Source: Blepharisma stoltei ATCC 30299 (Eukaryota; Protista; Ciliophora). Taken from it: 64,000 bases of DNA. How positions within the stretch are numbered: position 1 is the first letter of the stretch; the number at the start of each line of letters is the position of its first letter. The stretch is from NCBI GenBank assembly GCA_965603825.1, contig CBFDEM010000058.1, forward strand, positions 682,001 through 746,000, read 5' to 3'. The notes below the pieces were generated by a model. The model worked only from the letters and a program-made list of their open reading frames with translations, searched no databases and had not been told where the DNA came from. Positions 1 to 42,400 of the stretch are shown piece after piece. The translations under genes were made by a program, and so were the position numbers.

Positions 1-129
1 TTTGACATAGGAGTCTGATGATTCCTTTATCAAAGAAACGATATCTTCTCTTGCATTTTTAATTTCTTCATGTTCAAAAGCTTTTTGATGAAGAAAATTC
101 AGCTTCTCTAACTTAGTTGGCAAGTCCAT
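1..129 (-). CDS. 5' part (runs off window) of ATP-grasp-like/truncated-globin family paralogue 1
   Basis: ATG at 129 reads MDLPTKLEKLNFLHQKAFEHEEIKNAREDIVSLIKESS, closely matching the N-terminus of the gene at 2792 (MDLPAKLTKLNFIRQKTFEEEEIKNTRDDIVSLIKESS). Confidence 0.85.
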   Translation of the reverse strand, partial: MDLPTKLEKLNFLHQKAFEHEEIKNAREDIVSLIKESSDSYVK

Positions 130-767
130 TATTATAACAAAAAATGATATAAAAAAAAGTGTTGTATATGTAGGTATGCCAATTTGCTTAAACTTTTGCA
201 TAATATGGGCTGTTAAAAATTATAAACTTGTTTTTTATTGTAATTGATTTCTAATTAATTTTATTTTCCAATAAATCTATTTTTTGAGATTTTATTTAAA
301 ACAATTTTATATCAGAATTGCTATATTTAAGAGCTGAAGTAGTTATAAGAATTATAAATAAATTCTGGCATTTAAATAATGATTTCTGATGCTGTTAAAT
401 TAAAACAGTTAATAAAATAAAAGGAATTCTGCAGAAAGAAAGAAAGAAATACGTATTTGCTCTAGAATTTTTATATTAAAAATAGAGCACCAAGATCAAC
501 TTTATTACTGCGAGATTTCATCTATCTGTTCTTTTATTCATCTACTTCAAGTCATATGATTAATTCCCAAGTGATAGAATGCTGGCTTTGCATTCATTTT
601 TTGTTAAAGATTCGTCATTGAAATAGACAATTCCCACATGATTATTTCATAGTCTCTAATTTATTTTTTTAATAAAACACTTATTAAGCTATCTATTAAC
701 TTCAAAACTGTCCGTTTGCATTTTCGCTTAAATTTTACCTATGGTATATTTAATTATTCAATTAAAC

Positions 768-2792
768 TTAATCAGTTCCTTGTTTGCATACCAAAGTCTT
801 CAATGACCTGATTTGCGCCATCATAATGCTTTTATCAAGCTCTTTTATTTGGAATTCTACCAGTGTGCTTTCGTAAATATCGCTGAAACTATTAAACTCT
901 TTTTCAGAGAGCTCCAAAGGTTGATGAGCAGCTCTTATTCTTCTTCTGAACTTAGGATCAATTGTTCCATTAAATAAATTAAACATCCCAGAAACAATCA
1001 TTGTAAAATTTTCAAGTTTTGCACATTTAAAATATTTGATGAGAGAATTATTTTCAAGAATTTTATTGCAAAGCGAAAAGATGAATTGGTCCCAAAATGG
1101 TTTACCGCCGTATTTTTCTACTAAATTTTCGTTTTTAACTTTTGTCGCTTGTGTGCTTAGATTCATTTCGTCTAAATTATCAACAATGGTATTGATATGA
1201 TTTTTTACAAAAGTATCAACCATTGTAGAAAATGATGGTTTTTTTGCTTTTGCGAAAATTTCAGTTGGATGATTAATTATAAGGGGATTTTTTCTTCTTA
1301 CTGAGCTAAATAGACATGACATAGGGCTTGAGTCTGCAAAATAAAATGGGCATTTTTGAGGTGCTGTAGACATTGAATTTATGCTCATTTCGCCTTCATT
1401 ATTGGCGATTTTATCTGATCTTTCGTTTAATGTATAGCATTTATCATAAAGCTCATTTTCAGGTATAGGTTTGGGATTCGATTTATTTCTATATAACCCA
1501 GCTAAAGAGTTCGTAGATTTTACCACACTTTTGTTTAAATCTTGTTCTGGAGCTTCAACAATAAATTCTTCTACTTTAGAATTATCCAGACTACTATATT
1601 TGTTTCTTTGTCTTCTAAAGCATATGCTTATTGTTTCAGGAATTTTAATAGGCTGAGATCTTCTTAAGCTTGTATTTAAACTGTTTGCAAATTCTTTGCA
1701 TTTGAGCAAAAATCATTTTTTATCCCTGTTTTGTATAAAATCAAGCACAATTCCATTGATATAATTATCTTTAAAAGGATATTTATTTAAAAACTCAATG
1801 ATTTTGGCAGTCATAGCGCTAATTTCAGGAAATTGCCCTTTGGTCTCAACAACAAAACATTTTTCAGGGTTTTTTGGATTTACTAAAAATTCATTACTAT
1901 TGTCTTTACTAATTTGAGTAAATAAATTATTTTTTGTCTCTTTGGGGGGATTAATACTAGCATAAAATTCTTCAGATGTACTATAAGAAAACGACTTTGA
2001 TCTCCCTTTTGGTATTAAGACTGACTCTTTTTCACTTTTTACCTTGAAAGGGTTGTTTATAGATTGAGAAGATTTGTTTAGCAGTGTCCTATAATCAAAA
2101 GTAGAGAGCCTCCTCTTTTGAGCGAATCCAGGATCGACAGCTGCAGGCTTAGGCTCAGTCTTCACTTTTCGACTGAGCTTTTTATAGTTAATAATAGAAA
2201 AATATTTTGTCTTGGCTCCATCTACTCACAAAACCCTTATAATAGATGCAGGGTTTGAAAAACTCAGAATGTAATGCTGCATTTTGGCAGTCTCCTTGGA
2301 AGAATTTCAAACAGTTTTTGCAGACTCTTTTGAGTGCATAAGATCTCCTTCTTTGTTTAGTGCTTTATAGATGTAAAGTGGGGCATTTTCTTCATACTCA
2401 GTTTCTATGTTATAATATTCTTCCTCACTGCAAGGCCTGGTAACAACTTTTCCAGTTTTTGCTGTCTGAACTAAATTTGAAGGGAAATTCTCATTTCTGA
2501 CAATTGTGGTTGGGATATTTATATCAATGCTGCTTACGGCTGGATATTTTATAAAAGTATCAAAAATATCTAATTTCCGTTGAATGGAGTTACTTGACAG
2601 CAAGCTATTGAATTTTTGAGCATTTTTTCTTTCCAGAAGCTTAGAATTGTTTCCAAAGCCGTTAATAAGAGCTTTTTGTGACGATTCCTTAATCAAGGAA
2701 ACGATGTCATCTCTTGTGTTTTTTATTTCTTCTTCCTCAAAGGTCTTTTGACGAATGAAATTCAGTTTTGTAAGTTTAGCTGGCAAATCCAT
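768..2792 (-). CDS. ATP-grasp-like + C-terminal group I truncated hemoglobin fusion, paralogue 2 (674 aa)
   Basis: One frame once TGA at 2307-2309, 2226-2228 and 1713-1715 is read as Trp. The C-terminal ~120 aa has 2/2-globin motifs (LVEKYGG, KYF CD1, RAAH F8 His, EF). N-terminal motifs are IPTT, PLYIYK, MQHYI, IRVLW and GIVLDFIQNRDKKWFLL. Confidence 0.85.
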
Positions 2793-3643
2793 TATATAAA
2801 GATTAAAGGAATATAAAAAAAAAAATTAAATATCGCCTGCATCGATTATGGAAGGGTTATAGTTTTTTTAGTTCTATTTAATCTTCTAATTTAATTTTTA
2901 TTTAATAAATATTTTTGAAACCTTATCTGCATTAAATAAATTATTCAACAAAGGCGCTTTGTTAGAAATAATATTTTAAAGCTAATATTGCTAGTAAAGT
3001 ATCATTTACAAATTTCTGGAACTATTCAAAAGAAATTCTGATAGACAAATTATTTTTAGAGCTATTAGATTTATAAGTTTATTTTGATTATTAGAGATTA
3101 CTGTCAAAAACCGTAAGAATTTTGGATATACATGGAATAACAAATTTTCAAGTGAACCAAAACTGAAGTATCCTCCATGTGAAATATTTAGATTTATAAT
3201 GATACATAATCAGATATGGTGACCTCTCGGCCTATCTCAAGCACATATTTTATTATGCTACTAGGTTTTTAATAATTAAGAAATCGGAAGCAATGCTAGA
3301 TGTCTGTGGAATTTAACTCAAGTCTTTCTCCAGGCTAATTTTGCCTTTTTTGATGAGTAAGACATAAGTTAGAAAGGTTAAGCACGAACAATGTCTATGA
3401 AGGTGGATAGAGCACCGCTCAGCCTAGCAGAAAATTCTATTATGAAACTGGGTGATTTCCATGTAGACAACCCAGGTAGACAAGCATGAAAGAGTGAAGA
3501 ATCAAGGATACGCAACCACCTTTTAGGTGCAACAATTTATCACTGTCGCTATTACCTTTTCAATTTTAATTTATTTATTTATTTATTCACAAAAAGCATA
3601 TTAAATTTATAAATTATCATCTATATAAAAATTTCAATAATAT

Positions 3644-5671
3644 TTATATTCCTTTTGTTACTAGGCACTTCAAAGATTTAACTTGAGACATCATAAGCTG
3701 TCTATCTATCTCTTCAATCTGAAATTCATACAAAGTACTTTCAAAAATGTCAGAATAGCTTTCAAATTCATGGTCAGTAATCCCTAAATTATGGTGTGAT
3801 GACCTTATATTCCTTCTAAACTCAAGATTTACCATTCCATTAAAAATTGTGAACATCCCATGCATAATCATTCCAAAAGTCTCTAATTTCGTTTTCTTAA
3901 AATACTTGGTCAAGCTATCATTTGCCAAAATTTTATTATAAAGTGACAAAATAAACTGATTTCAAAATTGTTCTCCTCCATATTTTTCGCTTAAGTTTTT
4001 ATTGACTTTGGACAATTTGGTTTTAAACTTTGCTTCATCTAGATTATCTGCCACATTTTTTAAGTGCTTTCGGATGCATAAATTGTTTTTGTCACTATTT
4101 AAAGAATCCTTAATAAATGAAGCATTTTCAATTTTTAAGGTACTATTAAGTGGGCATTCGTAGAGTTCTGATGGAGGAATTGGGGAGAGAAACGGCCTGA
4201 GATTGTACCGCATTTTGTAAGCTTGGATACTTTGCTCTCTAAAATCAAGCGCACATAGACTTGTAGAGTGTGCGTGACTTACAATTCTATCAATTTTTTC
4301 GTTTACTTTGTGTATTCTATCTATAATATCTTTTTCTTGAACTTCTGGCTTGCAGTATTCTTTTGATTTTGATCTGATCCTAAAGGGCAGATCATAAGTT
4401 TTTTCTTTTTCATCTGATTCAGTAAAACTTGTCTCGGAGTATCTTTTGGATGATTCAATTTTATTTTTGGAGTTTTGGGGCAAATCAGAAGATTTTCGCC
4501 TTCTGGATGATAATGAGGAGGATTTTCTGTCTCCGATTTTATTCAATTCTAGTCCCAATTTATTAGTAAATGCACATTCTTTGCAATCAATTAACACCCA
4601 ATTTTTATCTTTATCTTGGATAAAATCAAGCACTAATCCTTTTATCCCGTCGTCTTTAAATACTTTGACATTTAAAAAATTTGTTATTTCTGAGACCATT
4701 TTTTCTAGTTCTGGGAATTTTCCTTTTATTTCTGCTCCTATGCAACTTTTAGGTTTTTGAGAATTTACAATAAATTCATTTGATATGAAATTGTCAGAGA
4801 ATCTTTGAAGATTTTCTTTTGTTAATAAAGGAATATCTTTATTTAAGAATTCATCATTTTCTCCATTAGTGACATTAATATCAGAAAATTCAGTCGTGCT
4901 TAAATAATTTTGTGGCTTATTGGCAATTATCGATTTTGATATTTGTGAAAATGTACTTGAGCAGCGAAAATCTGAAGATGGGCGATATATTTTTCTTGTC
5001 GGTTTTTTGGGGGTAAAATCGGTTGTTGATTCTGATTTGGTTCTTGCTGGAAGGTTGCGGTTTATAATATTGAAAAATTTGAGGTTACAGCCGATTTTTC
5101 ATAAAACTCGTGTTATAGAAGCTGGATTTGTGAAGCTTTGTACATAATATTGCATGATTGCAGGCTTTTTGGCTGATTTTCAAATTGTTTGAGCACTTTC
5201 AATTGATCTGAATGTTATAATTTCCTTATTTTCTACTTTATAGCAGAAAATTGGGTTAAAGTCATCATTTTTCTTTGGATTTAGCTTAAAAAATTCATTG
5301 TCAATGCAGGGTCGAGAAATAATAGCTCCATTTTTTAAAGTTTTCATCAAAAATGGAACCGAGATATTTTCTACCCTCAGTATTGTAGTTGGAATATTTA
5401 CAAAAACTCTAATTGAATCTAAATGCTTAGCAAATAAGCTGAAGAGATGTAGTTTTTGACATTTTGCAGTTTTTGGGAGCAAATTATTTAACTTTTGAAG
5501 AAAAAGGTCTTGGACACAGTCTTCTTTATTTATGACTCCGTCAAAAATGTCTTGATCTATTGACTCATCTTCAATCGTTCTAGAACCTTCTTTGAAATTT
5601 TTAATTTCATCCCTTTCACTGATTTTGTGATGATAATCCTTAAGGTCTTGCAATATAACTGGTATGTCCAT
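3644..5671 (-). CDS. ATP-grasp-like + truncated hemoglobin fusion, paralogue 3 (675 aa)
   Basis: Continuous frame with TGA=Trp at 5180-5182, 5099-5101 and 3962-3964. KYGGEQF-TGA aligns with KYGGKPFW and KYGGEDFW in the paralogues. Globin motifs SLYNKIL, KYF, RSSH. Confidence 0.85.
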
Positions 5672-6303
5672 AAACAGATTCTTTTTTTTAAGAATTACAT
5701 ATTTTCTTATTACTTTACTGATAGCATAAGGTATTAATTATTATCGGTGAATAATGAAGGTATTTTGCAATAAAAACTCATTTTAGAAATAAAAGAAAAT
5801 GCAAGTTTTTGCTTTAAACAATGCTATTGCTAAATCTCTAATTTAAAATATTTTTTATATGAAAATTTTAGATTGAAAAAGAAGATAGGAAAACAGTCTA
5901 TTTATTTATTAATATTTTAGACGCTTTAATACAATTTAAACACTTACAGAAATCTACAATAGTAAATCTTATTAACTACAAAGTATTTTATATATATTCT
6001 TAACTTTTTCTTATGAGGCCTTCTTATTCAGTAACCAGGATAGGGAGGCACTTTGCCTTGAATTAAAAAAATAATCTATAATAATTTAAAATTCAATAGT
6101 TAAAATCAAATGACAACAGTTTTTGGTAAAATCTCACAGTAAAATATTATAACTTAAAGATTAGTTTATATTCATGAGCAGATCCCTGCTTTCCAATAGG
6201 AAGTTGCTCATTTAAGATGAAATAATAAGATAATTATTCTAAAATCAAAAAAACTTCAAAACATGCACTTATAATCCAGGCTGCTTTATTAAAAATCACT
6301 TAT

Positions 6304-8379
6304 TTACTGTCTTACTACTAAGCACTTCATAGATTTAATTTGAGACATGATAACAGTTTTATCATCCTCCTCAATCAAAAACTCTTCCAAAGTTTTTTCA
6401 AAAATATCTGAGTAAGACTCAAATTCTTGCTCATTTACCAAATAATTTGCATGAACTGCCCTAACTCTTCTTCGAAACTGCATATTAATATCAGAGTTAA
6501 ATACCTTATACATACTTGTGCATATCATTTCAAAGTTTTCTAATTGTGTACATTTGAAATGTTTATTTAATACTTTATCTGCTAAAATTTGGCCATATAA
6601 TGATAAAATAAAATGCTGCCAAAAATCTTCGCCTCCGTATTTTCCGACTAAATCTTGCTCTTTTATTTTAGAAATTTTTATTTTTTTGGAAAGAGAGTCA
6701 AAGCTGTCAACTGTGGCTGTGAGATGTCTTCGGCTGCATCTGTAGACTTCATTATCAAAGGCAGGCTTATTCATGATTAATGATGGGTTTTGTGCTTGCT
6801 CTGGGGAGCTTGGAGATTGATGAGCTGGGCTAGCTAATGAATGCTTTATCATATTTAGAGGCATTGTGCCTGATTTTAAAAGATTTTTATAAGCTTCAAT
6901 GCTTTGCTCTTTAAAGTCAAATAGAGGTAGTATTTTTGATGGTCTGTAATCTGAAAGTTTTGTAGCTTTTTCAACAATTTTGTTATATCTTTCTATAATT
7001 GAGCTTTCATTTGGGCTGGAATCTTCAATTGGTTTGGATTTTGACCTAATATGGAATTTTGGTATATAATCTATTACATTTTCATTCTCACTTTCATCTA
7101 TAATCACACTTTTAGCTGTAATTAGTCGGTCTTCAGCATTTGCTTCCATTATTGTTTCCGGCTGAAGTGTCAATTTTTTGGGGGATTCTCTTTTTGAATA
7201 TAAAGGACACGCTGAATGCGCTCTTTCTATTTTATCAGGAGAAAAATATTGCTGAGACTCATTTAAAAGCAGCTCTTTGACATCTAAAAAAATCCAATTT
7301 TTCTGTTTATCTTGTATAAAATCCATAACGATCCCTTTAATCGTGTTTTCTTTAAAAATGTACGAGCTTAAAAAGTTTTTTACTTGCTTAAGCATCCCGT
7401 CCACTTCTTCAATTGGCCCACGCTTTTCCATGACCCAGCATTTGCCAATCATTTTGGTAGAAATTATATGCTGCTCATTATAATCTGGAGAAGGCGAATT
7501 ATCCGTAATTCTTTTTGTATCAAAAGTGTCATTTTTTCGTAAAAATTCTTGGGATCTTTTTTTGGGGATTTTTTTATCGTCAAAGCTTAAATTAAGCTTA
7601 AAAGGGTTATTTATAGAAGACGAAGTTTTCAATAGGTAATTTGTGAAGCGAAATTCAGGGGGACGAGAAGAAGATTTTGTGCGTTTTGGCTGCTTTTTGA
7701 TAGGAGTCAATTTATTTATTTTGCTCAAATGAGAGTCATTTCTGTTTACAATGCTGAAATATTTTATTTTTTGGGAGGATTTTCATAGAACTCTTAAAAT
7801 TGAAGTAGGCTTAGAACAGCATCGAATAAAGCGCTGGATTCTTTTGGGGCGATTTCGTGAGGCGATTCATGTATCTTCTGCTGTGTGAATGGAATTTATT
7901 AAGATTGACCGATTTGGGTGAGATTTGAAACAAAAAAGGGGAGAGTCATCAGAGTGTTCTCGGTAAAGTGAAAAAAATTTTTGTTCTGCGCAGGGAGTTC
8001 CGGAAATTTTCCCATGCTTGTCAGTTCAAAGCTTGTAGCTTGTAGGTAAATCTTCTCCAGCTATCAATGTATCTGGAATTCTAAGAGATATGCAATTTTC
8101 ATGCCAATGCCTAGCTAGCTCAAAGTATATATCAATCTGTTTAGGCTTTCCTCCAGTTTTACCAAGTAAACAATTGAGTTTCTCTATGAAAACATCATGA
8201 TTTTTTTGCGATTCAAGGCCTTTTCTAAATCTTAACCTTAATCCTTTCTTTGGAGACTCATCAATAAGTTTCAGCAGATGTGCACGATGTATTTTATCAT
8301 CTTCATTTGAATCATTATGATGAAAAGTCTGCTTATAGCTTACCCTGATCTGGTTTAATATATGTGGAACATTAATCAT
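6304..8379 (-). CDS. ATP-grasp-like + truncated hemoglobin fusion, paralogue 4 (691 aa)
   Basis: Continuous frame with TGA=Trp at 8026-8028, 7867-7869 and 7783-7785. Motifs IPDT, PLFCFK, IQRFI, LRVLW, GIVMDFIQDKQKNWIFLDVK. Globin motifs SLYGQIL, KHF, RAVH. Confidence 0.85.
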
Positions 8380-8629
8380 TACTCAATTTTTTGTACCAAA
8401 TCAGAATAATTGCAAACATTTTCGAATTTACTGTAGATTTAATCAGTATAAAAAAATTTTATATTACTCAATAAATCACTCCACCTCTTTACTACTTATT
8501 TTTTAATTCAGTATGCCGATTACCTCATCATTTTAAATTTTCACCAGCTATTAAATAATTTTTCCTTATTATTTATTATTTATTATTAAATATTAAATAA
8601 TTTTCTGAAAAATTTTCTTGTTTTATTTT

Positions 8630-10447
8630 CTATTTTAATTCAAAATCTCTGATAGGACTTGAAAGATCACAGTTTTCAACGATGACATTTGGAGTTGCGA
8701 CTCCAGCAGACCTCGGCGAATTAAATTCTTCACTAGTCAATGTGTCTCCTACTTCACTATCTCCATACTGAGAATCACTTACTCGTGAAGAAGTCCTTGA
8801 CATCTGAATTTCATCAAGCCATAAAGGAACTTTTAATTTTTCAGTTTCCTCTTTTTCGGTATCGAAATTTATATCAAGCGTGACCTATGTGTTTTTTACC
8901 ATCAATTGATCAATGATTTCACTTGAAAGCTTATAGTGGCTTGCGTATCTTAATACTAGTTGAGCTGCATAGTCAACGTCAACTTTAAAATTGACCATTA
9001 TATGCCCATAAGAAACTAATTGGCAAAACACAATATTTTTTATTCTCTGCTGGGTATCTTCAGCATTTTCCATTTTTGTAGCTTCCAGTTCTTCTTGGTT
9101 TTTGACTTCTTCGTCAATTGAGGTTTGTATAACTTTATTTCAAAATTCAAGGTTGGACCAGATTTTGTGGTCTAATATAAAGTTTTGTAAATATTGCTTG
9201 TTGGAATCTGGGTTATCACATTCCTTGTAAAAAGTCTGTGATAAAATAATGCAGCTTTTTCCAATCTGGCTATCCTGAAAACGGTCACACTAAATATCCT
9301 TTACCTCATTTAGAACTGATCTCAATAGCAACCCAATCTGGTTAAACCCTCCTTCTGCAATTGCAAAAATCCCATTATTTCTTCTTTGATTCAGACAGTA
9401 AGACCACAGTTTTCTCCCAAAAGAGTCTTTTATAATGTTATTGAAATGATTATAGTCCTCTGACGTTAACACATCTCCTTGCCATGCTTTTTGAATTATA
9501 GAGTCCATTTCTCCTCTCAGCATCTCCTCAATCGCATTTTGTGTCGCTTGTTCGTCATAGCCTTCCTCAAAAGCAGGTAAATCTATTAATGGAGGATTTG
9601 TACCAAGATTTTTAAAAGCATGGTGCTGTCCTTCATAAGGCTCAAAATCTACGCTTTCTTTTGTATAGTTTAAGTCAAAGTGGAAAATTTTGCTTAAATC
9701 GATCTGCATGTCCACTTTATCCATTGTGGTTTTTATTGAGTCCAGCTCAGTAAAGCTGGTTTGGTTGTAAATTAATTCGTAATTGAGGAGCTTGTAGACC
9801 AGCTCTTTTTTGGTTTCAAGACGCTGCCTTTCATGGCTTCTATAGATTTCGATTAAAGTTTTGACGTTTTCGGTGTATTGGTCGTAATATCTGTTTAAGC
9901 TTTCGACACTTTCTAAATAATTTTTTAAATTTGAATCCACTTCTCTCTTACAAATCACAAGTTTTTGTACGATTTTTTCTACTTTACCTTGGCTTCTTTG
10001 CTGCTCCATTTGTAAAGTAAGCTGCTCATAATCGCTGCAGGCTTTGGCGTATCTTTCTTTTGTTGTTTCGTTCCTCTCAATTAAATTTTCTTTTTCCTTT
10101 TCCAAAATCTGCCCTTCAGCATGTGTCTTTTTTATATTAAGGGCTTGGATTTTTAGTAATTCTCCGTATGGATCTGCTATTTGCTTTCTTATATTTTCCG
10201 CAAATATTTTGGCCTGCTTTGCCCTTTCTAGGCTTTCTAATTTAATAGCACTAAGAACATCTGATAAACTCCCATGATTTATCAAGAAATATGAGTGATT
10301 TCCAATCCTTTCCAGTCCTTTCGCATAGAATTCTTCATGCATGGCTCGTTCTCTTAGCAGCTGTATGAAATCTTCACCTGCCCTTCTCCTTTGTAATGAG
10401 TGCTGATGCATAATTTCAAAACAGTCAAAAATGCTTTTTGATGACAT
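8630..10447 (-). CDS. F-BAR/FCH-domain protein with C-terminal SBF2-like helical domain
   Basis: FCH motif (FIQLLRERAMHEEFYAKGL) followed by coiled coil. 15-nt introns at 9290-9304 and 8885-8899. HKIWSNLEF-TGA(W) at 9140-9142 resembles the SBF2/DENN-associated motif. Stop TAG at 8630. Confidence 0.7.
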
Positions 10448-20416: not shown

Positions 20417-22075
20417 TTAGTATCTACCTCCTCTATAATTATATTTTGGATATGGATCGGAAAAAGCAGGCTGGCCAAGCTCAAGATTGTCAAGATTCAT
20501 TAATTTTGCCTCAAGATCGACTGGACGGGCTGGCTCAACAGGCGCTGATTGGAAAGTGGTGAAATCCATAGCAGATCTTGGGTTCGCTTTTAGCTGAGAC
20601 ATAGTAGGTCCTTGGCCTTCTTGCAAATTCAAATTTATTTTCATGCTAGGGGTTTGGCTTTGCCCTTGTCCTCCTTGGTGCTGAACATCAGTTTGGTTTG
20701 TCCAAACATCAGCTGGAATTGTAGGGGTTCCCCATGCATTATTTTGCCAGGCAGGATTTGTTTTTGCAGGCTGATTAGTAGGAACAGAAACCCCAGCCCA
20801 TACATTTTCCATATGACTTGGAGGGACTCTTGGGTTTGTTTCAGCTGGTCTTGAATAAGTAGGGTTATTTGGAAATGAGGAAAGGGTATTAGAATATGGA
20901 GGATTTGATGGAGGAATATTTGTATATGTAGGAGGATTTGATGGAGTAATATTAGTATATGTAGGAGGATTTGATGGAGGAATATTTGTATATGTAGGAG
21001 GATTTGATGGAGGAATATTTGTATATGAAGGAGGATTTGATGGAGGAATATTGGTAGGAGGAGGCTTAGAATAAACTGGTGTCTGCCCCCATAGGTCCGA
21101 AGATTGCGTAGGTTTTGGCTCTTGACGTGGAGGCTGGTTCCATAAGGCTTCTAAGCTTGCCTGAGGCGGCTGTGGAGGAAACGGATTAAAAGGCTCAGGG
21201 GCTTTTTGTACTGCAGGCTGACTCCAAATATCTGCTGGTCTCTGTACAGGCTGATTCCAAGCAGGCTCTGGAATTGCTGTATTTTTAACTGTAACAGTTG
21301 CAAACAAATTTCCACCTGGTGGTGGATTAATTTTGGCTGGTGGTGGCATTCTATTATTAATAACCGGTTTTACTGCAGGTGCAGAAAAAATATCAATTTT
21401 AGGCTGCTCATTGATGACAGGCACTGGCTCTTCTATATGCTCTCCTAAATTACTATTTGACTGTCCTCCATAGTCTTGTTGCTGCTGTTCTTGTATATCT
21501 CTTCTCTTTTCTGGGTAAGGATCATAAGACCCTCCTCTCCCATAATAGTCATCCTCATATCTTCTATTACTGTCTGAATAATTCCCATATCTGCCTGAAT
21601 CACTTGACATACCTGAAAATTTGTCCCTGAGCTTTTTGGCTTTTTCCCTTTCTTCGTCTAGATACTTGTGATCTGCAATTAATTGGTTGATATATTTACT
21701 TTTGTCTCTTACGCCGCTGCCACGTTCTTCTCCTCCATCTCTATACGAAAAATCTTGGAGCAGCCTAATTTTGAACCCTTCATCTCTGATTTCGTTCATG
21801 CAGGAGTTTGAGCCGAATTTCAACAAATGTTCTATTAAATTCAAAGCTTTATATATCCTTCTCCACTCTTTTGGAGGCGATCTGAGATATTCCCACGTAC
21901 ATCTCATGATTACGGTCCTTTCTTCAGGGTTGTATGTTTTTTCTGCTATTTCGTGAAGAAGGGTATTCGATGTTCCGTAGTTTTCATCACTGCATACTTC
22001 AGCAATCATGCGTTCTAGTGGGGTTTTTGTGACACGATCTCGGAGACCAAGTGCTATCTTTTTTAGGGAATCCAT
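20417..22075 (-). CDS. ENTH-domain epsin/epsinR-like adaptor
   Basis: ENTH motif WRRIYKALNLIEHLLKFGS...ERGSGVRDKS, followed by a long Pro-rich tail with DIF/DIW/NPF motifs. Confidence 0.9.
   Translation of the reverse strand: MDSLKKIALGLRDRVTKTPLERMIAEVCSDENYGTSNTLLHEIAEKTYNPEERTVIMRCTWEYLRSPPKEWRRIYKALNLIEHLLKFGSNSCMNEIRDEGFKIRLLQDFSYRDGGEERGSGVRDKSKYINQLIADHKYLDEEREKAKKLRDKFSGMSSDSGRYGNYSDSNRRYEDDYYGRGGSYDPYPEKRRDIQEQQQQDYGGQSNSNLGEHIEEPVPVINEQPKIDIFSAPAVKPVINNRMPPPAKINPPPGGNLFATVTVKNTAIPEPAWNQPVQRPADIWSQPAVQKAPEPFNPFPPQPPQASLEALWNQPPRQEPKPTQSSDLWGQTPVYSKPPPTNIPPSNPPSYTNIPPSNPPTYTNIPPSNPPTYTNITPSNPPTYTNIPPSNPPYSNTLSSFPNNPTYSRPAETNPRVPPSHMENVWAGVSVPTNQPAKTNPAWQNNAWGTPTIPADVWTNQTDVQHQGGQGQSQTPSMKINLNLQEGQGPTMSQLKANPRSAMDFTTFQSAPVEPARPVDLEAKLMNLDNLELGQPAFSDPYPKYNYRGGRY
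20898..21056 (-). repeat. Coding 33-nt tandem repeat x~5 (TNIPPSNPP[T/S]Y)
   Basis: The + strand unit GGAGGATTTGATGGAGGAATATTTGTATATGTA repeats with few substitutions inside the epsin tail. Confidence 0.9.
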
Positions 22076-23356: not shown

Positions 23357-25165
23357 ATGAATTCCAACTTTTCAAATTCATCAACACCGACGCCTCAAGG
23401 AACCAGTCCAAGTCAGAATCCTGCTAACTCCTTATTTCTTCCATCTCAGCCTTTACTTCACCCAAATGTTCATACTGGAGTCAATTATCCTCCTTCCTAT
23501 GTTCCTGCTTCACCGCCTTGGATTCCTCCATGCATCAATCCATATACCAACAATATTTACCCAGTCCCATACCCCTACAACCTAAATCCTTACTATCCAG
23601 CCTTAGTAAACCCTCTTTATAATCCCATTCCTGTTGGCTTAGGCCCTCCTGCATTTCCAGGTCTAATCCTAAACCCTCGCCCTCCTGTGCTCCTGAATGG
23701 TCCTCCATCAGCTTATAATCCTCTTCTTCCTTTAAAGCGTTCTCGAGAAGTAGTAAACTTTGACGACGATGAAGAACTTGAAACCTCTCAGACTCCATCA
23801 GAAGAAGTCAAAGCTGAAGAAGCTCCTCTTATAGCTTCCCTCAATTTTCTATTCAATTATATAGAGCTAAAAAACGCAGCCCAAGAAGTCCCATGTACTC
23901 TTTCACTTCAAGGTATGGACATTTCACTTGATGAGATCCAGAAAAACCGTCAAGGGATAGACCTAGTCTGTGTCATTGATATCAGTGGAAGTATGGTCGG
24001 AGAAAAAATACAGCTTGTAAAGGAGACTTTGGAGTTTCTGCTTACGGTTTTAGATAGGAGAGATAGGATGAGTTTATGTGTTTTTAATAATTCTGGAAAG
24101 AGATTGACAAAATTAGTAACCCTTAATGATAAAGGGAAATCTATAATTTCAAAAGCACTTCGAAGAATTCAGGCTGTTGGAGGGACTAATATAGCTTCTG
24201 GAATGCAGCTTGCATATAATGTGCTGAATAGTCGAAGATTTATAAACCATATCACTTCTATCTTTCTTCTAACAGATGGACTTGACAACACAAATCCCGC
24301 TGCCTCAATTACAATTAAAGGACTTTCTGATTCTTTTCAGATTAAAAGCCCTACAATTATCCATACTTTTGGTTATGGAAGAGACCACGATGCTTTGCTA
24401 ATGCAAGATATTGCAAAAAATAGCAAAGGGAATTTCTATTTCGTAGAATTCCCTAAAAGTATTCCAGATGCTTTTGCAAACTGCCTTGGAGAGCTTGTGT
24501 CACTTATAGCAAACAATATAACGGTAAAGCTTGAAACCCAGGCTTGTGCTGTCCCATTTACCCTTTCCAAAGTTTTTTCAGAAAATGGTGATAGGGACTT
24601 TACAATGCCTCCAGTTTTTGCAGGTAGCAAAAAAGATACTGTATTTATGCTGAGATTTGATTCAAATGAAGCAAAAATTAATGCAACAATTCGTCCAATA
24701 AAGGCAAAAATAAGTTATGAAACCAAAAATAAAGAAAAACGGTATTTAGAATGCGAATTAGAAGTAAATGTAGTTACGGATGGAAAAGATGAAATTGAAA
24801 TCAATGAAGACGTAATGGTCAATTTTTATAGAGCCAAAGGGGCAGAAATTTTAAGGGCTATTTCAAGACTCGCTGAAGAAAGAAGACTGGATGAAGCCAA
24901 AAGATTAGCAGAAGCTGGTGCTCAGGAACTAAAAAACTCTATTGTAAAGCAAAACCCAGTGATCGCTGCGCTTATTAAAGATTTAGATGACGCAAAAGCG
25001 AGGGTCGCTTCAACTCAAGCTTGGGAAATGGGAGGAAGAGCACAGGTGGTGTCTCTATTTGGAAATTATCAAAACCAAAATGCAGCAAGCAACACAATGG
25101 TGTTTCAAAATTGTCAGCAGGCAGCTTTTTCTTCTCAAGCTTCAAGTTATTTTGGTAAACGCTAA
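23357..25165 (+). CDS. von Willebrand factor A domain protein with Pro/Tyr-rich N-terminus
   Basis: MIDAS motif DLVCVIDISGSM, GGTNIASG, FLLTDG, IHTFGYGRDHD. Confidence 0.9.
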   Translation: MNSNFSNSSTPTPQGTSPSQNPANSLFLPSQPLLHPNVHTGVNYPPSYVPASPPWIPPCINPYTNNIYPVPYPYNLNPYYPALVNPLYNPIPVGLGPPAFPGLILNPRPPVLLNGPPSAYNPLLPLKRSREVVNFDDDEELETSQTPSEEVKAEEAPLIASLNFLFNYIELKNAAQEVPCTLSLQGMDISLDEIQKNRQGIDLVCVIDISGSMVGEKIQLVKETLEFLLTVLDRRDRMSLCVFNNSGKRLTKLVTLNDKGKSIISKALRRIQAVGGTNIASGMQLAYNVLNSRRFINHITSIFLLTDGLDNTNPAASITIKGLSDSFQIKSPTIIHTFGYGRDHDALLMQDIAKNSKGNFYFVEFPKSIPDAFANCLGELVSLIANNITVKLETQACAVPFTLSKVFSENGDRDFTMPPVFAGSKKDTVFMLRFDSNEAKINATIRPIKAKISYETKNKEKRYLECELEVNVVTDGKDEIEINEDVMVNFYRAKGAEILRAISRLAEERRLDEAKRLAEAGAQELKNSIVKQNPVIAALIKDLDDAKARVASTQAWEMGGRAQVVSLFGNYQNQNAASNTMVFQNCQQAAFSSQASSYFGKR

Positions 25166-32062: not shown

Positions 32063-34126
32063 TTATTTAGTTAGCTGGCTTCTATAGTCCTTGAATTCTC
32101 CTTTAAATCTTCTAAGTCGCTTCTTTTTAATCACCCAAATTTCATCACAGACTGAGCTTACGAAATGCTGGTCGTGGCTAATGATTAAAACGCCTCCTGA
32201 AAATGTGTCTAAGGCCACAATGAGAGCATTGACTGCATCAATATCTAAATGGTTAGTTGGCTCATCTAAAAACAAAATGTGTGGCTGCTTGAAGGCGACT
32301 GCAGCAAAGGCAACTCTTGATTTTTGTCCTCCAGACAAAAAGCAGATGGGTCTTAATGCAAGGTTTCCGGTGATTCCAAATGATCCTAAGTGGGCTCGAA
32401 TTACTTCCGAAGGGGTGTTTGGATACTGCTTAGCGAGCTGCTCTAGTGGGGATGATGATAGATCAAGCTGGTCAATGTGATGCTGAGTAAAGGTTCCAAC
32501 CCTAAGCCTTCTGTGCTTATAATAATTTCCGTTAGTTAGGTGTAGTTCTTCGTTTAAGATTTTTAGAAGTGTTGTTTTTCCACAGCCATTTCTACCCAAA
32601 ATTGCCATTCTGCTGTTCATGTCGATATTTATATTGATTTCTGATATTAGCATATCTTCTGGTCCATACCCAAAAGACCCATCGTCAATTCTAAGTAAAG
32701 GAGCAGCCAAAGGTTCAACATCCGGGAACTCAAACACACAAGTAGGGTCATCTATTACATCTTCAATAATTTCCATCTTATTCAATGCTTTAATTCTTGA
32801 CTGCACCAACGACGCTCTTTTTGCATTGTATCTAAATTTATCAATGAATTTTTGTATATGATCAAGTTTCGCTGCTTGGCTGTCATGCTGCTTTTTCTGA
32901 TTCAGAAGCTTCTCATTCCTTGTGCGTTCAAAAGTATCATAGTTTCCTTTGTAATAAAATAAACTTTCACTATAAAAATGAATAGTATCAGTTGTGACGT
33001 TATTTAAGAAATTTCTATCATGAGACACCACAATTACTGTATTTTGATAGGAATTTAAAAAGATTTCAAGCCAAACGACAGTTTCTAAGTCTAAATGGTT
33101 GGTAGGCTCATCAAGAAGAAGTATATCAGGCTTGCAAAATAGCCCACGAGCAAGAGCAAGACGCATTCTCCAGCCTCCTGATAGCTGTTGTGTTGGAGTA
33201 TTCATAGTATCTTGTGTAAAGCCTAGACCTGATAAAATTGATGCAGCTCTGCTTTCAGCTGAAAATGCATCAATTAATGATAGCTGCTCACTTATTTTTA
33301 GATATTGTTCTGGGTCGTCTTGTGAGTTGTTTAAAGCTTTTAAGAGATCTTCTCTTTCAGAATCTGTTTCTAGCAAAGTTTGTAATGCGCCTTTTTCATC
33401 GCCAGTTATTTCTTGTTCGACATATAAAATATATATATGTTTTGGAATTTTATCAATTTCTCCCAATGCCATGGCACTAAGTAATGATGTTTTTCCTACA
33501 CCATTTCTTCCTATCAGACCATATCTTCTGCCAAATGCGATTTTTATTGCTGCATTTTCCAATAAAGTTTTCCCTCCAACCATAATAGAAAATCTATCGA
33601 CCATGATATCTAAGCTTCTGCTTTCACCTCTCTTATGCATCACTTTAGGTGGAGGCAGTGGCTTATGGATTTGCTTCATCGGAAGATTTTTTATGACTTC
33701 TTCTTCTTTCATCCTTTTGTTTTTTGGGAGTTTCCATAATTTTTCACCTGAGTTTGTGTTGACGGATGCTTTTTGAATGCCGAGGAAAGGATCAATATAG
33801 TCTGCAGTGATGCTTTCTGTGGATATACCAATATCAGAGATCATGATACCAGACGGCATTTGCTGTGCCACGATTCTTTCAACACGCTCCTGGCCTTCGA
33901 TTCCTTGTGCTTTTAGTTTGCTTCATAGGTCATCTGCTATCCTTTTGTTTTCGCTTTCAGATTTTGTGAAGCCATCAGTAAGAAAATCTTGAAGAAGATC
34001 ATAAAGTTCTTGTGCACTGCTCGGAGGGTCTTCGATGATCATTCCTGACATGTAGGAATAGCATCGCTCTGGAATGTCAAGATGTGAGCAGACTCTTCGA
34101 ATGATGCTCTCGACCTCTTCTTCCAT
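32063..34126 (-). CDS. ABCF3: ABC-F family ATPase (GCN20/ABCF3-like)
   Basis: Two ABC domains (GRNGVGKT, LSGGW, LLLDEPTNHLD; GRNGCGKT, LSGGQ) and no TM segments. The N-terminal part is joined through TGA at 33923-33925. Confidence 0.9.
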
Positions 34127-39467: not shown

Positions 39468-42400
39468 ATGAGAAATCTCTGGCCTTTTCATCATCAGAAC
39501 TTCTCAGTTCCGAATGCGGTCGGAGTTTCCACTGACCAGCACAAAATTTTCTTGTTATCTGGGACTAGTGAATTAGTAATTATAGACAAAAAATCTGGCA
39601 CAAAAGAGCTGATTCCTTTAGATGAAGAAATTGAGGATTTGGTAAACATGACTTACTTGCAATTAGAAGAAAATCTTATATTTATTTCTGCAAATGGCTC
39701 ACTTTATTCATACAGCTTCGAGACAAAAGAAACTTCCATTGAAGGCGAAATAACAACTGGGATTTCAGCAGCTCAATGGGCACCCTCTCAAGAACATTTA
39801 GTGATTTTCGCGAAAAATGGAAGCTTACTGATCCATAACTCAGAATTAGATTTTATTAGAGAAGTTAAGCTTGATTTAGGACCAGAAGCTACAGTTAGCT
39901 GGAGAGGAGACAGCAAGTTTTTCGTTGTGTGTGGCCAAGCTGAAGGCGGAAATAAAGCCTTGACTTTTGCAGCAAATGGAGATTTAGTTGAGTCTCATTT
40001 CAAGTCAGATCCTGATGGAGGCAAAGTACAAAATATCAGTGAAAAAACCAGCTTGCTAGGGTCACATATTGCCAGCTGGCAAACTACAGGAAGTTTAATT
40101 GCTGGGATTAAAAATGACAAAATTTTACTATGGGAAAAGAATGGACTTTTGCATGCTGATTTTCAAAATAGGTATAATGAACAGATTAAGCAGCTGGAAT
40201 GGAGTCTTAATGGAGAAATCCTCGCAATTGTTATGATAAATAGAGTAGCTTTATACTATCGCAGCAATTATCATTGGTTTCTAAAGCAATCCTATGAAAG
40301 AGTTTCTCCGAAAATCCAATGGGCTGGAAATTCATTGATTATTTTATCAGACACTGTTGAAAAAATTGACTATATTTGGAAACATGACGCACTCGGCGAA
40401 AAAGTAGTCGTCGTTGACGGAGAATCCCTTAATATTACCCATTTCAGCCAAGGCTTAATTCCACCCCCAATGTTCCACGATTCCATAAATCTTGGCTTCG
40501 TCCCTGAGCTCTTGTCTATGAATTCCTCAGGAACCATCAGCCTAGCCTACAAAAACAAAATTTTCCTATTTGATTCCTCCTTACACGAATTATGCGAATT
40601 TCCTAATACAAAAAAACTTGAATTTGCAGGCCAAAGACTTTTCATTTCAAATGGTTTCCAAGTGTTTGAAATCATTGAAAATAAGCTTGAAAAACTTTTT
40701 GATTTTAATAAAGAAATTTTAGTTTTAAAAGGAGAAGATAATGGAAACCTTTGGATTGAATTTATTGATGGAGAAATATATAGAAATAATGAATTTTATA
40801 TCAGTGAAAAAGAAATTTGTGAAAAAATTTACCCTGTTTGTATGGAAGGGAAACCAAATATTTTAGGATTGGCTGGGAATAAGCTGTATTTAAATAAAAT
40901 TTTATTATGTACAAACTGCACGAGTGCTGGGGTTTTTGGGGATTTTTTGCTGTTTACTAAACAAAATGTGCCTTTAAGCGAGCTTTATTTATTAAATAGA
41001 AATTTTCCGATCCCATTTCCAATAGGGCAAGACCAATCAATAACTCTTCCTGAGCCATCAGCTGACCATTATTATAGCCGCAGTATAGAAAAAGGAAGCG
41101 TAATCGTCACTTTGCAAGGCGTCAATGTAATTCTTCAGCATAACAGAGGCAATTTAGAAGGAATTTATCCCCGACTCGTCGTAATATACAAATCAAAAGA
41201 GCTAATTGAGGCTACAAAATATGGAGAAGCCTTTAAGCTGTTAAGGACCCACAAGCTTGATTTAAATTTTATTTACGATTTAGACCCAGAGAAATTTATG
41301 ACAAATATTGAGAAATTTATTTCCGAAGTGGCCAAAGGAGACTTTATTAATCTTTTTTTGACCTCTTTAAAAGACCAAGATATGGCTGCAGTCTATTTAA
41401 AGCAAGACCCTAAAGATATCAAAGGAAAAACCAATAAAATCTGTGACGCAATTAGAGAAAAACTGAATTTAGCTACACATACTTTGTCGATAATTACGTC
41501 ATATGCTGCAAAATCACCACCAGAGCTAGAACAAGCTCTAGTCTGGATTCAGCATATAAGAGAAAAATACCCAAAAAAGCCGCCAAGACCTCCACACATG
41601 CATGAAGGTAAAAGAGACGATAAAATTTACCCTGAAGACTCCTTAAAATACTTAAGCTGGCTTGTGGACCCTGACAAGCTTTTTGATGTTGCTTTAGGAA
41701 TGTACGATTTAGAATTAACAACACAAACAGCCCAATTTACCCAAAAAGACCCAAAAGAATATTTGCCATACCTAAAGTCATTAAACCAAATGGACGATGT
41801 AAGAAAAAAGGTCAAAATCTGTATAGACTTAAAAAGATACAAAAAAGCTTTAGACGAATTAATTGCAGGCGGGGAAGAATTTTATAGTGAAGCATTAGAA
41901 CTAGTAGCCAGTCAAGGACTTTATATAGAAGGGCTGAAATTGTTTAAAGGGACCAGTTTTGAAATCCAAGCCAAAGAAGCTATTGCAAAGTGTCTGGAAA
42001 AAAAAGAACTTTATATACAATCTGCTGCTTTGTATGAGAGCTGCAATAACTATCAGAAGGCAAAAGAAAACTATATTAAAGGCCAAGAGTGACAGCTTGC
42101 AGGGAATATGGCACAAATGCTAGGAGAAGATATTTCTAATTTTTATGAAAATTTAGCTCACAATTGTGGAGAAATGGGGAATTATGAAGAAGCTGCAAAT
42201 TTGTTGCAAAAATCCAATGATGAAGAAGGCTCGGCAGTCAGGTATCTTATACAAGGAGGAAGGTTCAAACAGGCAATTTTAGCTTCAAAAAATAATGAAA
42301 GCAAAAGTCTTGTCTTAGGAAGCTTAAGAACTTTTGGGAATGAATTAATGGAAGATATGAAGAAAAATACTGAGCTTTGGAAAGAAAAATACACAAGGCT

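What the first reader, a model, noticed from the sequence alone, without database searches (positions are those of the whole stretch)
1..8379. Tandem array of >=4 genes fusing a degenerate ATP-grasp-like domain to a truncated hemoglobin: candidate globin-coupled sensor family
Seen: with TGA=Trp, three complete genes of 674-691 aa plus a fourth 5' end lie head-to-tail. Each complete gene ends in a ~120-aa domain with group I 2/2-globin hallmarks (L.EKYGG, B10 Tyr/Cys, CD1 Phe, F8 His in RAAH/RSSH/RAVH, G-helix Phe). The N-terminal half keeps the ordered motifs IP[T/D]T, P-x-x-x-x-K, Q-x-[Y/F]-[I/V], RVLW and G-x-V-x-DFIQ[D/N]-x-x-K-x-W, interrupted by a Ser/Lys-rich insert. Established: that motif order is typical of ATP-grasp enzymes (RimK/TTLL type), and the characterised Paramecium and Tetrahymena trHbs are single-domain. 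Inference: these could be O2/NO-responsive nucleotide-binding switches. The ATP-grasp E-x-N metal ligands appear replaced (KCK/DCK/DVK), suggesting a pseudo-enzyme or altered chemistry. I do not recall this architecture being described.
Basis: partly seen in the sequence, partly recalled or inferred. Interest (0 to 1): 0.9.

Follow-up and report, generated by a model that had tools for sequence, protein, structure and literature searches.

The report
Haemoglobin fused to cilia-motor-holder-like domain
This ciliate (Blepharisma stoltei) has more than 50 expressed genes, three of them here, that join a small haem-binding haemoglobin to a catalytically degenerate ATP-grasp-like domain whose closest known relative holds dynein motors on trypanosome flagella, which suggests (unproven) an oxygen- or NO-reactive part tethered to the ciliary machinery.

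Summary
On the minus strand, with TGA read as Trp, the window holds three intact genes of 674, 675 and 691 aa, plus the first ~43 codons of a fourth.

They are the last members of a same-strand tandem array on this contig. At least 43 full-length paralogs were fetched genome-wide, and about 53 strong matches to the globin domain were found.

- **C-terminal domain:** the last ~120 aa is a group I truncated haemoglobin. A family profile matches the Tetrahymena trHb at E 2.9e-8, and the AF2 model matches only 2/2 globins. F8 His, B10 Tyr and CD1 Phe are conserved; E7 and E11 are apolar.
- **N-terminal domain:** it has an ATP-grasp fold (Z 10.7-12.3 to TTL, Ddl, RimK). Its nearest relatives are trypanosomatid DC4 and TbDC65, subunits of the docking complex for the outer dynein arm (Z 17.7 and 16.1). 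The homology link runs through intermediate profiles (E 3.9e-29, then 2.4e-15).
- **Expression:** RNA-derived contigs cover each ORF without a break, so the globin is not shown to be a separate transcript.
- **Distribution:** the fusion also occurs in Stentor coeruleus and in metagenome contigs.

Function is inferred, not shown. My best reading is a haem protein tethered by a scaffold-docking pseudo-enzyme, possibly at the axoneme. An earlier follow-up of this scan reached the same reading on another piece of this genome.

The parts
1..129 (-). 5' end (about 43 codons from the family-like start MDLP; the first in-frame ATG is at 201) of a fourth family gene, C58:680069-682219, whose body lies before the window
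768..2792 (-). g1: complete gene, 674 aa, 3 in-frame TGA (Trp), no intron; transcribed
   Evidence: RNA-type contigs span 742-2788 with no gap or joint.
2157..2537 (-). g1: first half of the DC4-like ATP-grasp-like domain (NIPTT, PLYIYK, QHYI, RVLW)
   Evidence: The profile of distant homologs (A3) matches at E 2.1e-16. Motif conservation.
1929..2156 (-). g1: basic Ser/Lys-rich insert. The equivalent insert of the modelled paralog is predicted disordered. It holds the conserved SINNPF motif and is absent from the distant globin-less homologs of A3.
   Evidence: pLDDT <50 for the equivalent residues 186-279 of the modelled paralog. Composition: K+R 0.20, S+T 0.21, net charge +10. Gap in hhalign.
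1686..1928 (-). g1: second half of the DC4-like domain (GIVLDFIQNRDKKW-FLL-KCK-E; the E-x-N position reads K-C-K)
   Evidence: A3 profile E 3.2e-17
1218..1685 (-). g1: variable linker, not folded here
   Evidence: Low conservation. Low pLDDT in the pre-globin part of the g3 model.
780..1217 (-). g1: pre-helix plus group I truncated haemoglobin domain (KYGG at aa 560; B10 is Cys in this copy; F8 His623 codon at 924-926)
3644..5671 (-). g2: complete gene, 675 aa; DC4-like halves at 5048-5410 and 4562-4783; globin domain at 3653-4087 (F8 His codon at 3794-3796)
   Evidence: RNA-type contigs span 3628-5675; one contig, 3628-4740, covers the globin, the linker and the DFIQD motif.
6304..8379 (-). 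g3: complete gene, 691 aa; DC4-like halves at 7714-8094 and 7255-7515; globin domain at 6307-6744 (F8 His codon at 6451-6453). It is the last gene of the array.
   Evidence: AF2 model of its last 150 aa.

Best explanation
**Shown**
- These are expressed, intron-less genes of a large heterotrich-ciliate family.
- The protein has four sections. First comes an N-terminal ATP-grasp-fold domain homologous to trypanosomatid DC4/TbDC65. Within it sits a basic insert of ~75-100 aa, predicted disordered in the modelled paralog. A variable linker of ~170 aa follows. The protein ends in a group I truncated haemoglobin that keeps the proximal His, TyrB10 and PheCD1.
- The ATP-grasp metal site is gone.

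**Inferred**
- The N-domain is a non-catalytic docking module. In trypanosomatids DC4 sits on the DC1/DC2 coiled coil of the outer-dynein-arm docking complex and touches a dynein heavy chain.
- The N-domain would tether the haem domain, through the flexible linker, to a cytoskeletal and possibly axonemal site.
- There the haem would bind or turn over O2, NO or peroxide. It could act as a local sensor that influences ciliary beating, or as a local scavenger.
- On this reading the protein is a tethered haem protein, not an allosteric enzyme switch.
For: **Globin domain**
- A profile of 30 paralog C-termini hits solved group I trHbs: Tetrahymena 3aq5 at E 2.9e-8, plus GlbN, LI637, THB1 and HbN.
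- The AF2 model (pLDDT 79.6) matches truncated (2/2) haemoglobins in its first 46 rows, mostly group I, with TM up to 0.81.
- Among 43 paralogs, F8 His is kept in 42, B10 Tyr in 40 and CD1 Phe in 42.

**N-terminal domain**
- The AF2 core has pLDDT 80-92.
- Foldseek's top three hits are 9e78_5K, 9y6s_5K and 9e5c_7c, at E 3e-8 to 5e-7.
- VIA-align gives Z 17.7 and 16.1 for those chains, against 10.7-12.3 for TTL, Ddl, RimK and TTLL6.
- Those chains are named 'distal DC4 | ODA dDC4' and 'TbDC65'.
- The homology chain is: the Blepharisma profile A2 against the distant-homolog profile A3 gives hhalign probability 99.8%, E 3.9e-29. A3 hits DC4 at E 2.4e-15. A3 also hits g1-g3 directly at E 1e-12 to 1e-18.
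- DC4's position and role are taken from PMC7617938.

**Lost catalytic site**
- The 'E' position reads D26/K5/G4/N3/E3 and the 'N' position reads K31/R9 among 43 paralogs.

**Expression and distribution**
- Contigs from which a 16-nt GT..AG intron has been removed nearby cover the whole ORFs but not the spacer.
- The same fusion occurs in Stentor coeruleus OMJ86194 and in environmental contigs.
Against: - There are no localisation, haem-binding or ligand data.
- DC4 is only one characterised member of a wide family with no Pfam entry.
- The same genome has at least 13 insert-free, globin-less DC4-like genes that match the canonical profile far better (E 1e-31 to 9e-54). The fused genes are therefore a divergent branch, not the obvious DC4 equivalents.
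- More than 50 paralogs is many for a fixed axonemal subunit.
- The direct Blepharisma profile finds nothing in PDB sequences.
- K143, Q172, R186 and D351 are nearly invariant, so a ligand site may persist in the N-domain.
Confidence: 0.42

Rival explanations
1. Globin-regulated nucleotide-binding switch. The ligand or redox state of the haem is passed to the ATP-grasp-like domain and changes its ATP binding or hydrolysis, which signals onward.
For: Nearly invariant residues sit at the places that hold ATP in ATP-grasp enzymes: Lys 41/43, the Q-x-[FY]-[IV] hinge 43/43, the Arg of RVLW 43/43, and the Asp of DF 41/43. These residues, and an acidic residue after the lost site (E367, 41/43), are better kept here than in DC4 itself (alignment).
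Against: The E-x-N metal ligands are lost, and the 'E' position is variable. The domains are separated by a ~170-aa poorly conserved linker. The nearest characterised relative is a structural subunit. No Pfam or PDB sequence match to any ATP-grasp enzyme was found.
Confidence: 0.15
2. A locally acting haem enzyme or buffer with no sensing role, for example an NO dioxygenase, a peroxidase or an O2 store. It would have expanded in heterotrichs that carry photodynamic pigments (blepharismin, stentorin) or live at low O2. The N-domain would only set location or solubility.
For: Group I trHbs of microbes are mostly linked to NO and O2 chemistry (established knowledge). TyrB10 and the proximal His are kept. 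The large copy number and tandem arrays fit dosage or diversification. The two named carriers are Blepharisma and Stentor. That these are pigmented heterotrichs is my own knowledge.
Against: The polar E7/E11 residues that help ligand chemistry in many trHbs are replaced by Phe and Val/Ile. The single-domain trHbs in the same genome keep a polar E11 and could already do such jobs. Nothing here separates this reading from a sensor.
Confidence: 0.25
3. An active ATP-grasp ligase with altered chemistry (for example a TTLL-like modifier of tubulin or another protein) that carries a globin as a regulatory domain.
For: The fold is closest among enzymes to TTL (Z 12.3) and TTLL6 (Z 10.7). Several ATP-site residues are conserved.
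Against: The metal-binding E-x-N is replaced by (D/K/G/N)-C-(K/R) across the family, by Q-x-K in the distant homologs and by W-C-G in DC4. There is no sequence-level match to the TTL or RimK Pfam models.
Confidence: 0.05
4. The globin-like domain no longer binds haem and serves only as a structural or oligomerisation module in a fast-evolving family of unknown role.
For: The window genes score below Pfam's cut-off for Bac_globin (13.7-14.6 bits against 21). One window copy (g1) has Cys at B10.
Against: The proximal His is kept in 42 of 43 paralogs and in 12 of 13 distant fused homologs, together with PheCD1. That pattern is hard to explain without haem.
Confidence: 0.08

Closest known systems
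Group I truncated haemoglobins (TrHbN / T1), e.g. Tetrahymena pyriformis trHb (3aq5), Paramecium trHb (1dlw), Chlamydomonas THB1, M. tuberculosis HbN
   Same: The 2-on-2 helical fold, the KxGG motif before helix B, TyrB10, PheCD1 and the proximal HisF8 in register over ~100 residues.
   Different: It is the C-terminal domain of a ~680-aa protein, not a ~120-aa single-domain protein. E7 is Phe and E11 is Val/Ile, instead of the Gln/Gln of the Tetrahymena protein. Only one Gly is left of the EF Gly-Gly. It falls below Pfam's cut-off. The same genome also has ordinary single-domain trHbs; two of them (L036, L037) share the 'EKYGG..FW' start.
DC4 (Leishmania LtaP31.0090, PDB 9e78 chain 5K) and TbDC65 (T. 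brucei, 9e5c chain 7c): ATP-grasp-like subunits of the outer-dynein-arm docking complex
   Same: They are the best structural matches (Z 17.7 and 16.1, 213 residues aligned). They share the motifs IP(D/T)T, Q-K-F-I and R-V-(V/L)-W. Both lack the ATP-grasp metal site.
   Different: DC4 has no globin and no basic insert, and was described as trypanosomatid-specific. The window genes keep the D of 'DF' that DC4 has lost. Homology is seen only through intermediate profiles. The genome has closer, globin-less relatives of the canonical family. Axonemal location of the window proteins is not shown.
ATP-grasp ligases of the TTL/TTLL, RimK and D-Ala-D-Ala ligase types
   Same: The overall fold (Z 10.7-12.3) and the order of the motifs.
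   Different: No sequence-level family match. E-x-N is lost. A disordered insert interrupts the domain.
Globin-coupled sensors (S family, e.g. HemAT) and other chimeric globins (flavohaemoglobin, androglobin)
   Same: A globin joined to a non-globin domain in one polypeptide. Chimeric T1 globins in ciliates have been mentioned in silico (PMC7475203).
   Different: Globin-coupled sensors have an N-terminal 3/3 globin and a C-terminal transmitter. Here a 2/2 globin is C-terminal and the partner is a scaffold-like pseudo-enzyme. No held paper has both 'truncated hemoglobin' and 'ATP-grasp'.

Membership tests
Group I truncated haemoglobin (T1/TrHbN) | 2-on-2 alpha-helical globin fold | tested here: met
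   AF2 model of the last 150 aa of g3 (pLDDT 79.6). The first 46 Foldseek rows are truncated (2/2) haemoglobins, mostly group I, with probability 0.98-1.00 and TM by target up to 0.81.
Group I truncated haemoglobin (T1/TrHbN) | Significant sequence-profile similarity to solved trHbN proteins | tested here: met
   The profile of 30 paralogs gives 3aq5 at E 2.9e-8, and 12 further distinct trHbN sequences at E<0.01. A single sequence alone gives only E~1.
Group I truncated haemoglobin (T1/TrHbN) | Proximal His F8, Tyr B10, Phe CD1 | tested here: met
   F8 His 42/43, B10 Tyr 40/43 (g1 has Cys), CD1 Phe 42/43.
Group I truncated haemoglobin (T1/TrHbN) | Gly-Gly motifs at the AB and EF corners | tested here: inconclusive
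   The AB motif KYGG is invariant. At the EF corner only one Gly ('FNG') is kept.
Group I truncated haemoglobin (T1/TrHbN) | Pfam PF01152 (Bac_globin) gathering score | tested here: not met
   g2 scores 14.6 bits and g3 13.7 bits against a cut-off of 21. 20 of 30 paralogs match at E<=1; the best is 3.7e-5.
Group I truncated haemoglobin (T1/TrHbN) | Binds haem b | not testable with these tools
   Needs expression and spectroscopy.
ATP-grasp enzymes | ATP-grasp fold | tested here: met
   VIA-align Z: TTL 12.3, Ddl 11.8, RimK 11.7, synapsin 11.6, LysX 11.0, TTLL6 10.7, over 160-197 residues. Foldseek.
ATP-grasp enzymes | Mg-binding D ... E-x-N triad | tested here: not met
   D (of DF) is kept in 41/43. 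The 'E' position reads D26/K5/G4/N3/E3 and the 'N' position reads K31/R9/Q2/N1. The window genes read KCK, DCK and DVK.
ATP-grasp enzymes | Match to a Pfam or solved-structure sequence model of the superfamily | tested here: not met
   No hit for the N-terminal profile or its members.
ATP-grasp enzymes | ATP binding and ligase activity | not testable with these tools
   The conserved K143, Q172 and R186 leave nucleotide binding open.
DC4/DC65-like ATP-grasp-like scaffold family | Structural similarity well above that to ATP-grasp enzymes | tested here: met
   Z 17.7 and 16.1 against at most 12.3 for enzymes, with 213 residues aligned.
DC4/DC65-like ATP-grasp-like scaffold family | Sequence homology | tested here: met
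   The link is transitive: A2 to A3 by hhalign at 99.8%, E 3.9e-29; A3 to DC4 at E 2.4e-15 and to TbDC65 at 2.4e-6; A3 to g1-g3 at E 1e-12 to 1e-18. The direct search of A2 against PDB is blank.
DC4/DC65-like ATP-grasp-like scaffold family | Orthology to DC4 (same branch of the family) | tested here: inconclusive
   At least 13 insert-free, globin-less genes of the same genome fit the canonical profile much better. A quick FastTree without support values did not resolve the branches.
DC4/DC65-like ATP-grasp-like scaffold family | Binds the DC1/DC2 coiled coil on the doublet microtubule | not testable with these tools
   Needs localisation, pull-down or cryo-EM of heterotrich axonemes.
Globin-coupled sensors (S family) | N-terminal 3/3 sensor globin followed by a C-terminal transmitter domain | tested here: not met
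   The globin here is 2/2 (T family) and C-terminal. Definition taken from PMC7475203.

The most novel reading that the evidence does not exclude
These proteins are haem-based O2/NO/redox sensors built into the axoneme. They would dock like DC4 on the outer-dynein-arm docking complex and tune dynein activity, and so ciliary beat or reversal, directly according to gas or redox state. The >50 paralogs would serve different ciliary territories or ligand ranges. A corollary is that DC4, published as trypanosomatid-specific, belongs to an old, widespread eukaryotic family.
Probability: 0.15. Interest if true: 0.9.

Novelty: new variant of a known kind. Interest (0 to 1): 0.66.

Why it matters
If the reading holds, this would be a eukaryotic haem protein family physically coupled to a cilia-associated scaffold module. 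That offers a testable route from O2/NO or redox state to ciliary behaviour in large, easily observed ciliates.

Two results stand regardless of function:
- The ATP-grasp-like docking subunit DC4, described in 2025 as trypanosomatid-specific, has sequence homologs in ciliates, Thecamonas, Telonema and a euglenid. A structure search adds a cluster with oomycete members. No Pfam match was found for the ten homologs scanned.
- A truncated haemoglobin has been recruited as the C-terminal domain of more than 50 paralogs in one genome. This is an unusually large expansion of a chimeric globin.

Tried and rejected
- **Bacterial (Mollicutes) origin.** I considered this first because of TGA=Trp and the low GC. 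It is rejected: the genome is 41.5 Mb in 64 contigs, and identical or near-identical proteins are named Blepharisma stoltei.
- **Pfam on the pieces of g1-g3.** Only sub-threshold Bac_globin matches appeared.
- **The N-terminal profile against PDB sequences and Pfam.** Blank.
- **The search for homologous proteins.** The word-indexed search gave only 2 and 5 hits, so it was of little use for taxonomic range.
- **Complex prediction on the N-domain against the globin domain of one paralog.** The result was 'no answer' (score 0.01; controls not run). This is no evidence either way.
- **Quick FastTree of N-domains.** The fused and unfused proteins were not cleanly separated, and no support values were computed, so I draw no conclusion on one or several fusion events.
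- **Rfam on window 1-9300.** Nothing was found, including for the small spliced transcript in the g1-g2 spacer.
- **Pseudogene or junk-array reading.** Rejected, because 43 paralogs have intact ORFs, key residues are conserved, and RNA-type contigs cover the genes.
- **dN/dS.** Not attempted; the paralogs are only ~40-50% identical, so synonymous sites are saturated.
- **Literature.** No held paper links Blepharisma or Stentor with truncated haemoglobin, or truncated haemoglobin with ATP-grasp.

Full report
**1. What is in the sequence**

The region is 27-34% GC. With table 11 the long frames are broken only by TGA. With TAA/TAG as the only stops, three minus-strand ORFs appear: g1 768..2792 (674 aa), g2 3644..5671 (675 aa) and g3 6304..8379 (691 aa). 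Each has three in-frame TGA codons.

The window is G000:C58:682001-746000 of a 41.46-Mb genome in 64 contigs. Database proteins of this family are named Blepharisma stoltei.

TGA = Trp is shown directly. In an alignment of 43 paralogs, four essentially invariant Trp columns are encoded by a mix of TGA and TGG (25/14, 17/26, 17/26, 12/31). 71 of 99 in-frame TGAs fall in Trp columns.

The fourth gene is C58:680069-682219. Its family-like start (MDLP...) is at window 129; the first in-frame ATG is at 201.

**2. Scale of the family**

A search of the genome itself with the last 148 aa of g3 gave 60 matches. About 53 of them reach E<1e-25.

I fetched the arrays and found 43 full-length ORFs of 613-717 aa. 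They include:
- same-strand tandem genes on C58 at 653.7-690.4 kb, of which the window holds the last three;
- a second array on C22 at 175-213 kb;
- smaller groups on C12, C35, C55, C59 and C58 at 835-841 kb, and single copies elsewhere.

After g3 the window continues with ordinary eukaryotic genes: F-BAR-like, ENTH, VWA, ABC-F, ELP1, M20 peptidase and SPRY/CTLH.

**3. The C-terminal domain**

One sequence against PDB sequences gives only E~1, but in perfect register with Tetrahymena trHb. A profile of 30 paralog C-termini (A1) hits group I truncated haemoglobins. The hits are Tetrahymena pyriformis 3aq5 (E 2.9e-8), Synechococcus GlbN, Chlamydomonas LI637 and THB1, M. tuberculosis HbN and Paramecium 1dlw.

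The AF2 model of the last 150 aa of g3 has pLDDT 79.6. Its first 46 Foldseek rows are all truncated (2/2) haemoglobins, mostly group I, with TM by target up to 0.81.

Mapping through the ungapped alignment gives these counts among 43 paralogs:

| Position | Residue | Count |
|---|---|---|
| F8 | His | 42/43 |
| B10 | Tyr | 40/43 (g1 has Cys) |
| CD1 | Phe | 42/43 |
| E7 | Phe | where aligned |
| E10 | Ile | 42/43 |
| E11 | Val/Ile | mostly |

The genome's own single-domain trHbs (L035-L037) have Val at E7 and Gln or Asn at E11. Two of them share the 'EKYGG..FW' start of the fused domain. They are plausible relatives of the recruited domain.

The window genes stay below Pfam's cut-off for PF01152.

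**4. The N-terminal domain**

There is no Pfam or PDB sequence hit. The AF2 model comes from a TGA-free paralog of the same array (L015, using 8 aligned N-termini). It has a confident core (residues 41-185 and 280-352, pLDDT 80-92) interrupted by a disordered insert (residues 186-279).

Foldseek ranks three chains first: 9e78_5K, 9y6s_5K and 9e5c_7c (E 3e-8 to 5e-7). ATP-grasp enzymes follow.

VIA-align gives these Z scores:

| Chain or enzyme | Z |
|---|---|
| 9e78_5K | 17.7 |
| 9e5c_7c | 16.1 |
| TTL | 12.3 |
| Ddl | 11.8 |
| RimK | 11.7 |
| synapsin | 11.6 |
| TTLL6 | 10.7 |

A full HMMER scan of 1.84 billion representatives with the N-terminal profile gave 146 hits. Many are 500-720-aa proteins that also carry the globin domain according to my family HMM. 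One of these is Stentor coeruleus OMJ86194. Others are globin-less proteins of Thecamonas, Telonema and the euglenid Ploeotia.

An alignment of ten distant, mostly globin-less homologs (A3) hits 'distal DC4 | ODA dDC4' at E 2.4e-15 and 'TbDC65' at 2.4e-6, over the whole domain. A2 against A3 by hhalign gives 99.8%, E 3.9e-29, with the Blepharisma insert as one gap. A3 also hits g1-g3 directly, in two halves, at E 1e-12 to 1e-18.

According to PMC7617938, dDC4 (LtaP31.0090) is an ATP-grasp-like protein. It is bound to the DC1/DC2 coiled coil of the outer-dynein-arm docking complex, contacts the ODA alpha heavy chain, and its loss slows swimming. The paper calls it trypanosomatid-specific.

**5. 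Catalytic site**

Across 43 paralogs:
- the Lys of P-x-x-x-x-K is kept in 41/43;
- Q of the hinge is kept in 43/43;
- R and W of RVLW are kept in 43/43;
- D and F of DF are kept in 41/43 and 43/43.

At the position of the ATP-grasp E-x-N, fixed through the PruB alignment and the alignments, the family reads (D26/K5/G4/N3/E3)-C-(K31/R9). The distant homologs read Q-x-K and DC4 reads W-C-G.

The loss is ancient and family-wide, which fits a non-catalytic module. The conserved K, Q, R and D leave ligand binding open.

**6. Expression**

Four runs of one study hold 68-75% of the words of window 700-5800. Their contigs cover g1 (742-2788) and g2 (3628-5675) without gaps or joints, and leave 2790-3100 empty.

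In three runs, a 16-nt GT..AG stretch at 3357-3372 has been removed from a separate plus-strand unit at 3105-3543. The tool could only guess that the runs are RNA. The removed mini-intron and the empty spacer argue that they are.

Single contigs bridge the globin, the linker and the DFIQ motif (for example 3628-4740 and 1019-1837). The contig ends support the chosen ATGs and very short UTRs. Contigs cannot exclude an additional internal start.

**7. Distribution**

The fused architecture also occurs in Stentor and in gene-dense eukaryotic contigs from an activated-sludge metagenome and another metagenome. In those contigs it appears as single copies.

The Blepharisma genome additionally has at least 13 insert-free, globin-less DC4-like genes that fit the canonical profile far better (E 1e-31 to 9e-54). 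The fused family is therefore a divergent branch of a large superfamily.

The ESM Atlas shows related unnamed clusters in ciliates and oomycetes.

**8. Interpretation**

*Shown:* the domain identities, the lost metal site, the conservation of haem-pocket residues, transcription of the whole ORFs, the family size and the taxonomic spread.

*Inferred:* the N-domain is a docking module, and the haem domain is tethered by the long linker to a cytoskeletal, possibly axonemal, site. There it senses or turns over O2, NO or peroxide.

I put 0.42 on this tethered-haem-protein reading and 0.15 on its most specific form, an axonemal gas sensor that tunes dynein.

This is not a globin-coupled sensor in the defined sense.

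**9. Novelty**

A review notes chimeric T1 globins in ciliates in silico, without naming partner domains (PMC7475203). No held paper joins 'truncated hemoglobin' with 'ATP-grasp', or either heterotrich genus with truncated haemoglobin.

An earlier follow-up of this scan on another piece of the same genome (s1-624626) reached the same reading. I re-derived it independently here before seeing that note.

I rate this a new variant of known kinds: a new architecture built from two known folds.

Noticed in passing
window 3105-3543 (+), in the spacer between g1 and g2: A separate transcribed unit on the opposite strand. RNA-type contigs of three runs cover it and lack 16 nt at 3357-3372 (GTAAGACATAAGTTAG), a typical heterotrich mini-intron. 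I found no long ORF, and there is no Rfam match.
   Followed up: partly
G000: C24:403217-403873, C11:91296-91946, C32:798760-799392, C39:474113-474769, C29:144942-145613, C57:630113-630742 and seven more: At least 13 dispersed, insert-free, globin-less genes with the canonical DC4-like domain (E 1e-31 to 9e-54 to the profile of distant homologs). They are likelier counterparts of trypanosomatid DC4 than the fused genes are.
   Followed up: partly
L035 (C54:165901-166260), L036 (C38:533025-533390), L037 (C32:292982-293350), L033 (C18), L034 (C11): Single-domain truncated haemoglobins of the same genome, in frames of 119-140 aa. L036 and L037 share the 'EKYGG..FW' start of the fused domain. L033 and L034 have His at B10.
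   Followed up: partly
P0120 (Thecamonas trahens), P0135 (Telonema subtile), P0099 (Ploeotia vitrea), P0097 and others: The DC4-like domain, published as trypanosomatid-specific, has clear homologs (shared NIPDT, QKFI, R-x-VW, DFIKD..WWF-Q-x-K-x-F) in distant flagellated eukaryotes. The ten homologs scanned (including P0097 and P0099) had no Pfam match.
   Followed up: partly
window 8400-64000: The rest of the window carries ordinary eukaryotic genes (F-BAR-like 9290-10447, ENTH 20417-22075, VWA 23357-25165, ABC-F 32063-33871, ELP1 39468-42944, M20 peptidase 54726-56165, SPRY/CTLH 62119-63525). There are no further family members; the array ends at g3.
   Followed up: partly
L041 (activated-sludge metagenome contig), 2448-3941 and 5721-7253: In an environmental ciliate-like contig, the fused gene lies 1.8 kb from a genuine TTL-family (PF03133) gene. 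This may be chance.
   Followed up: no
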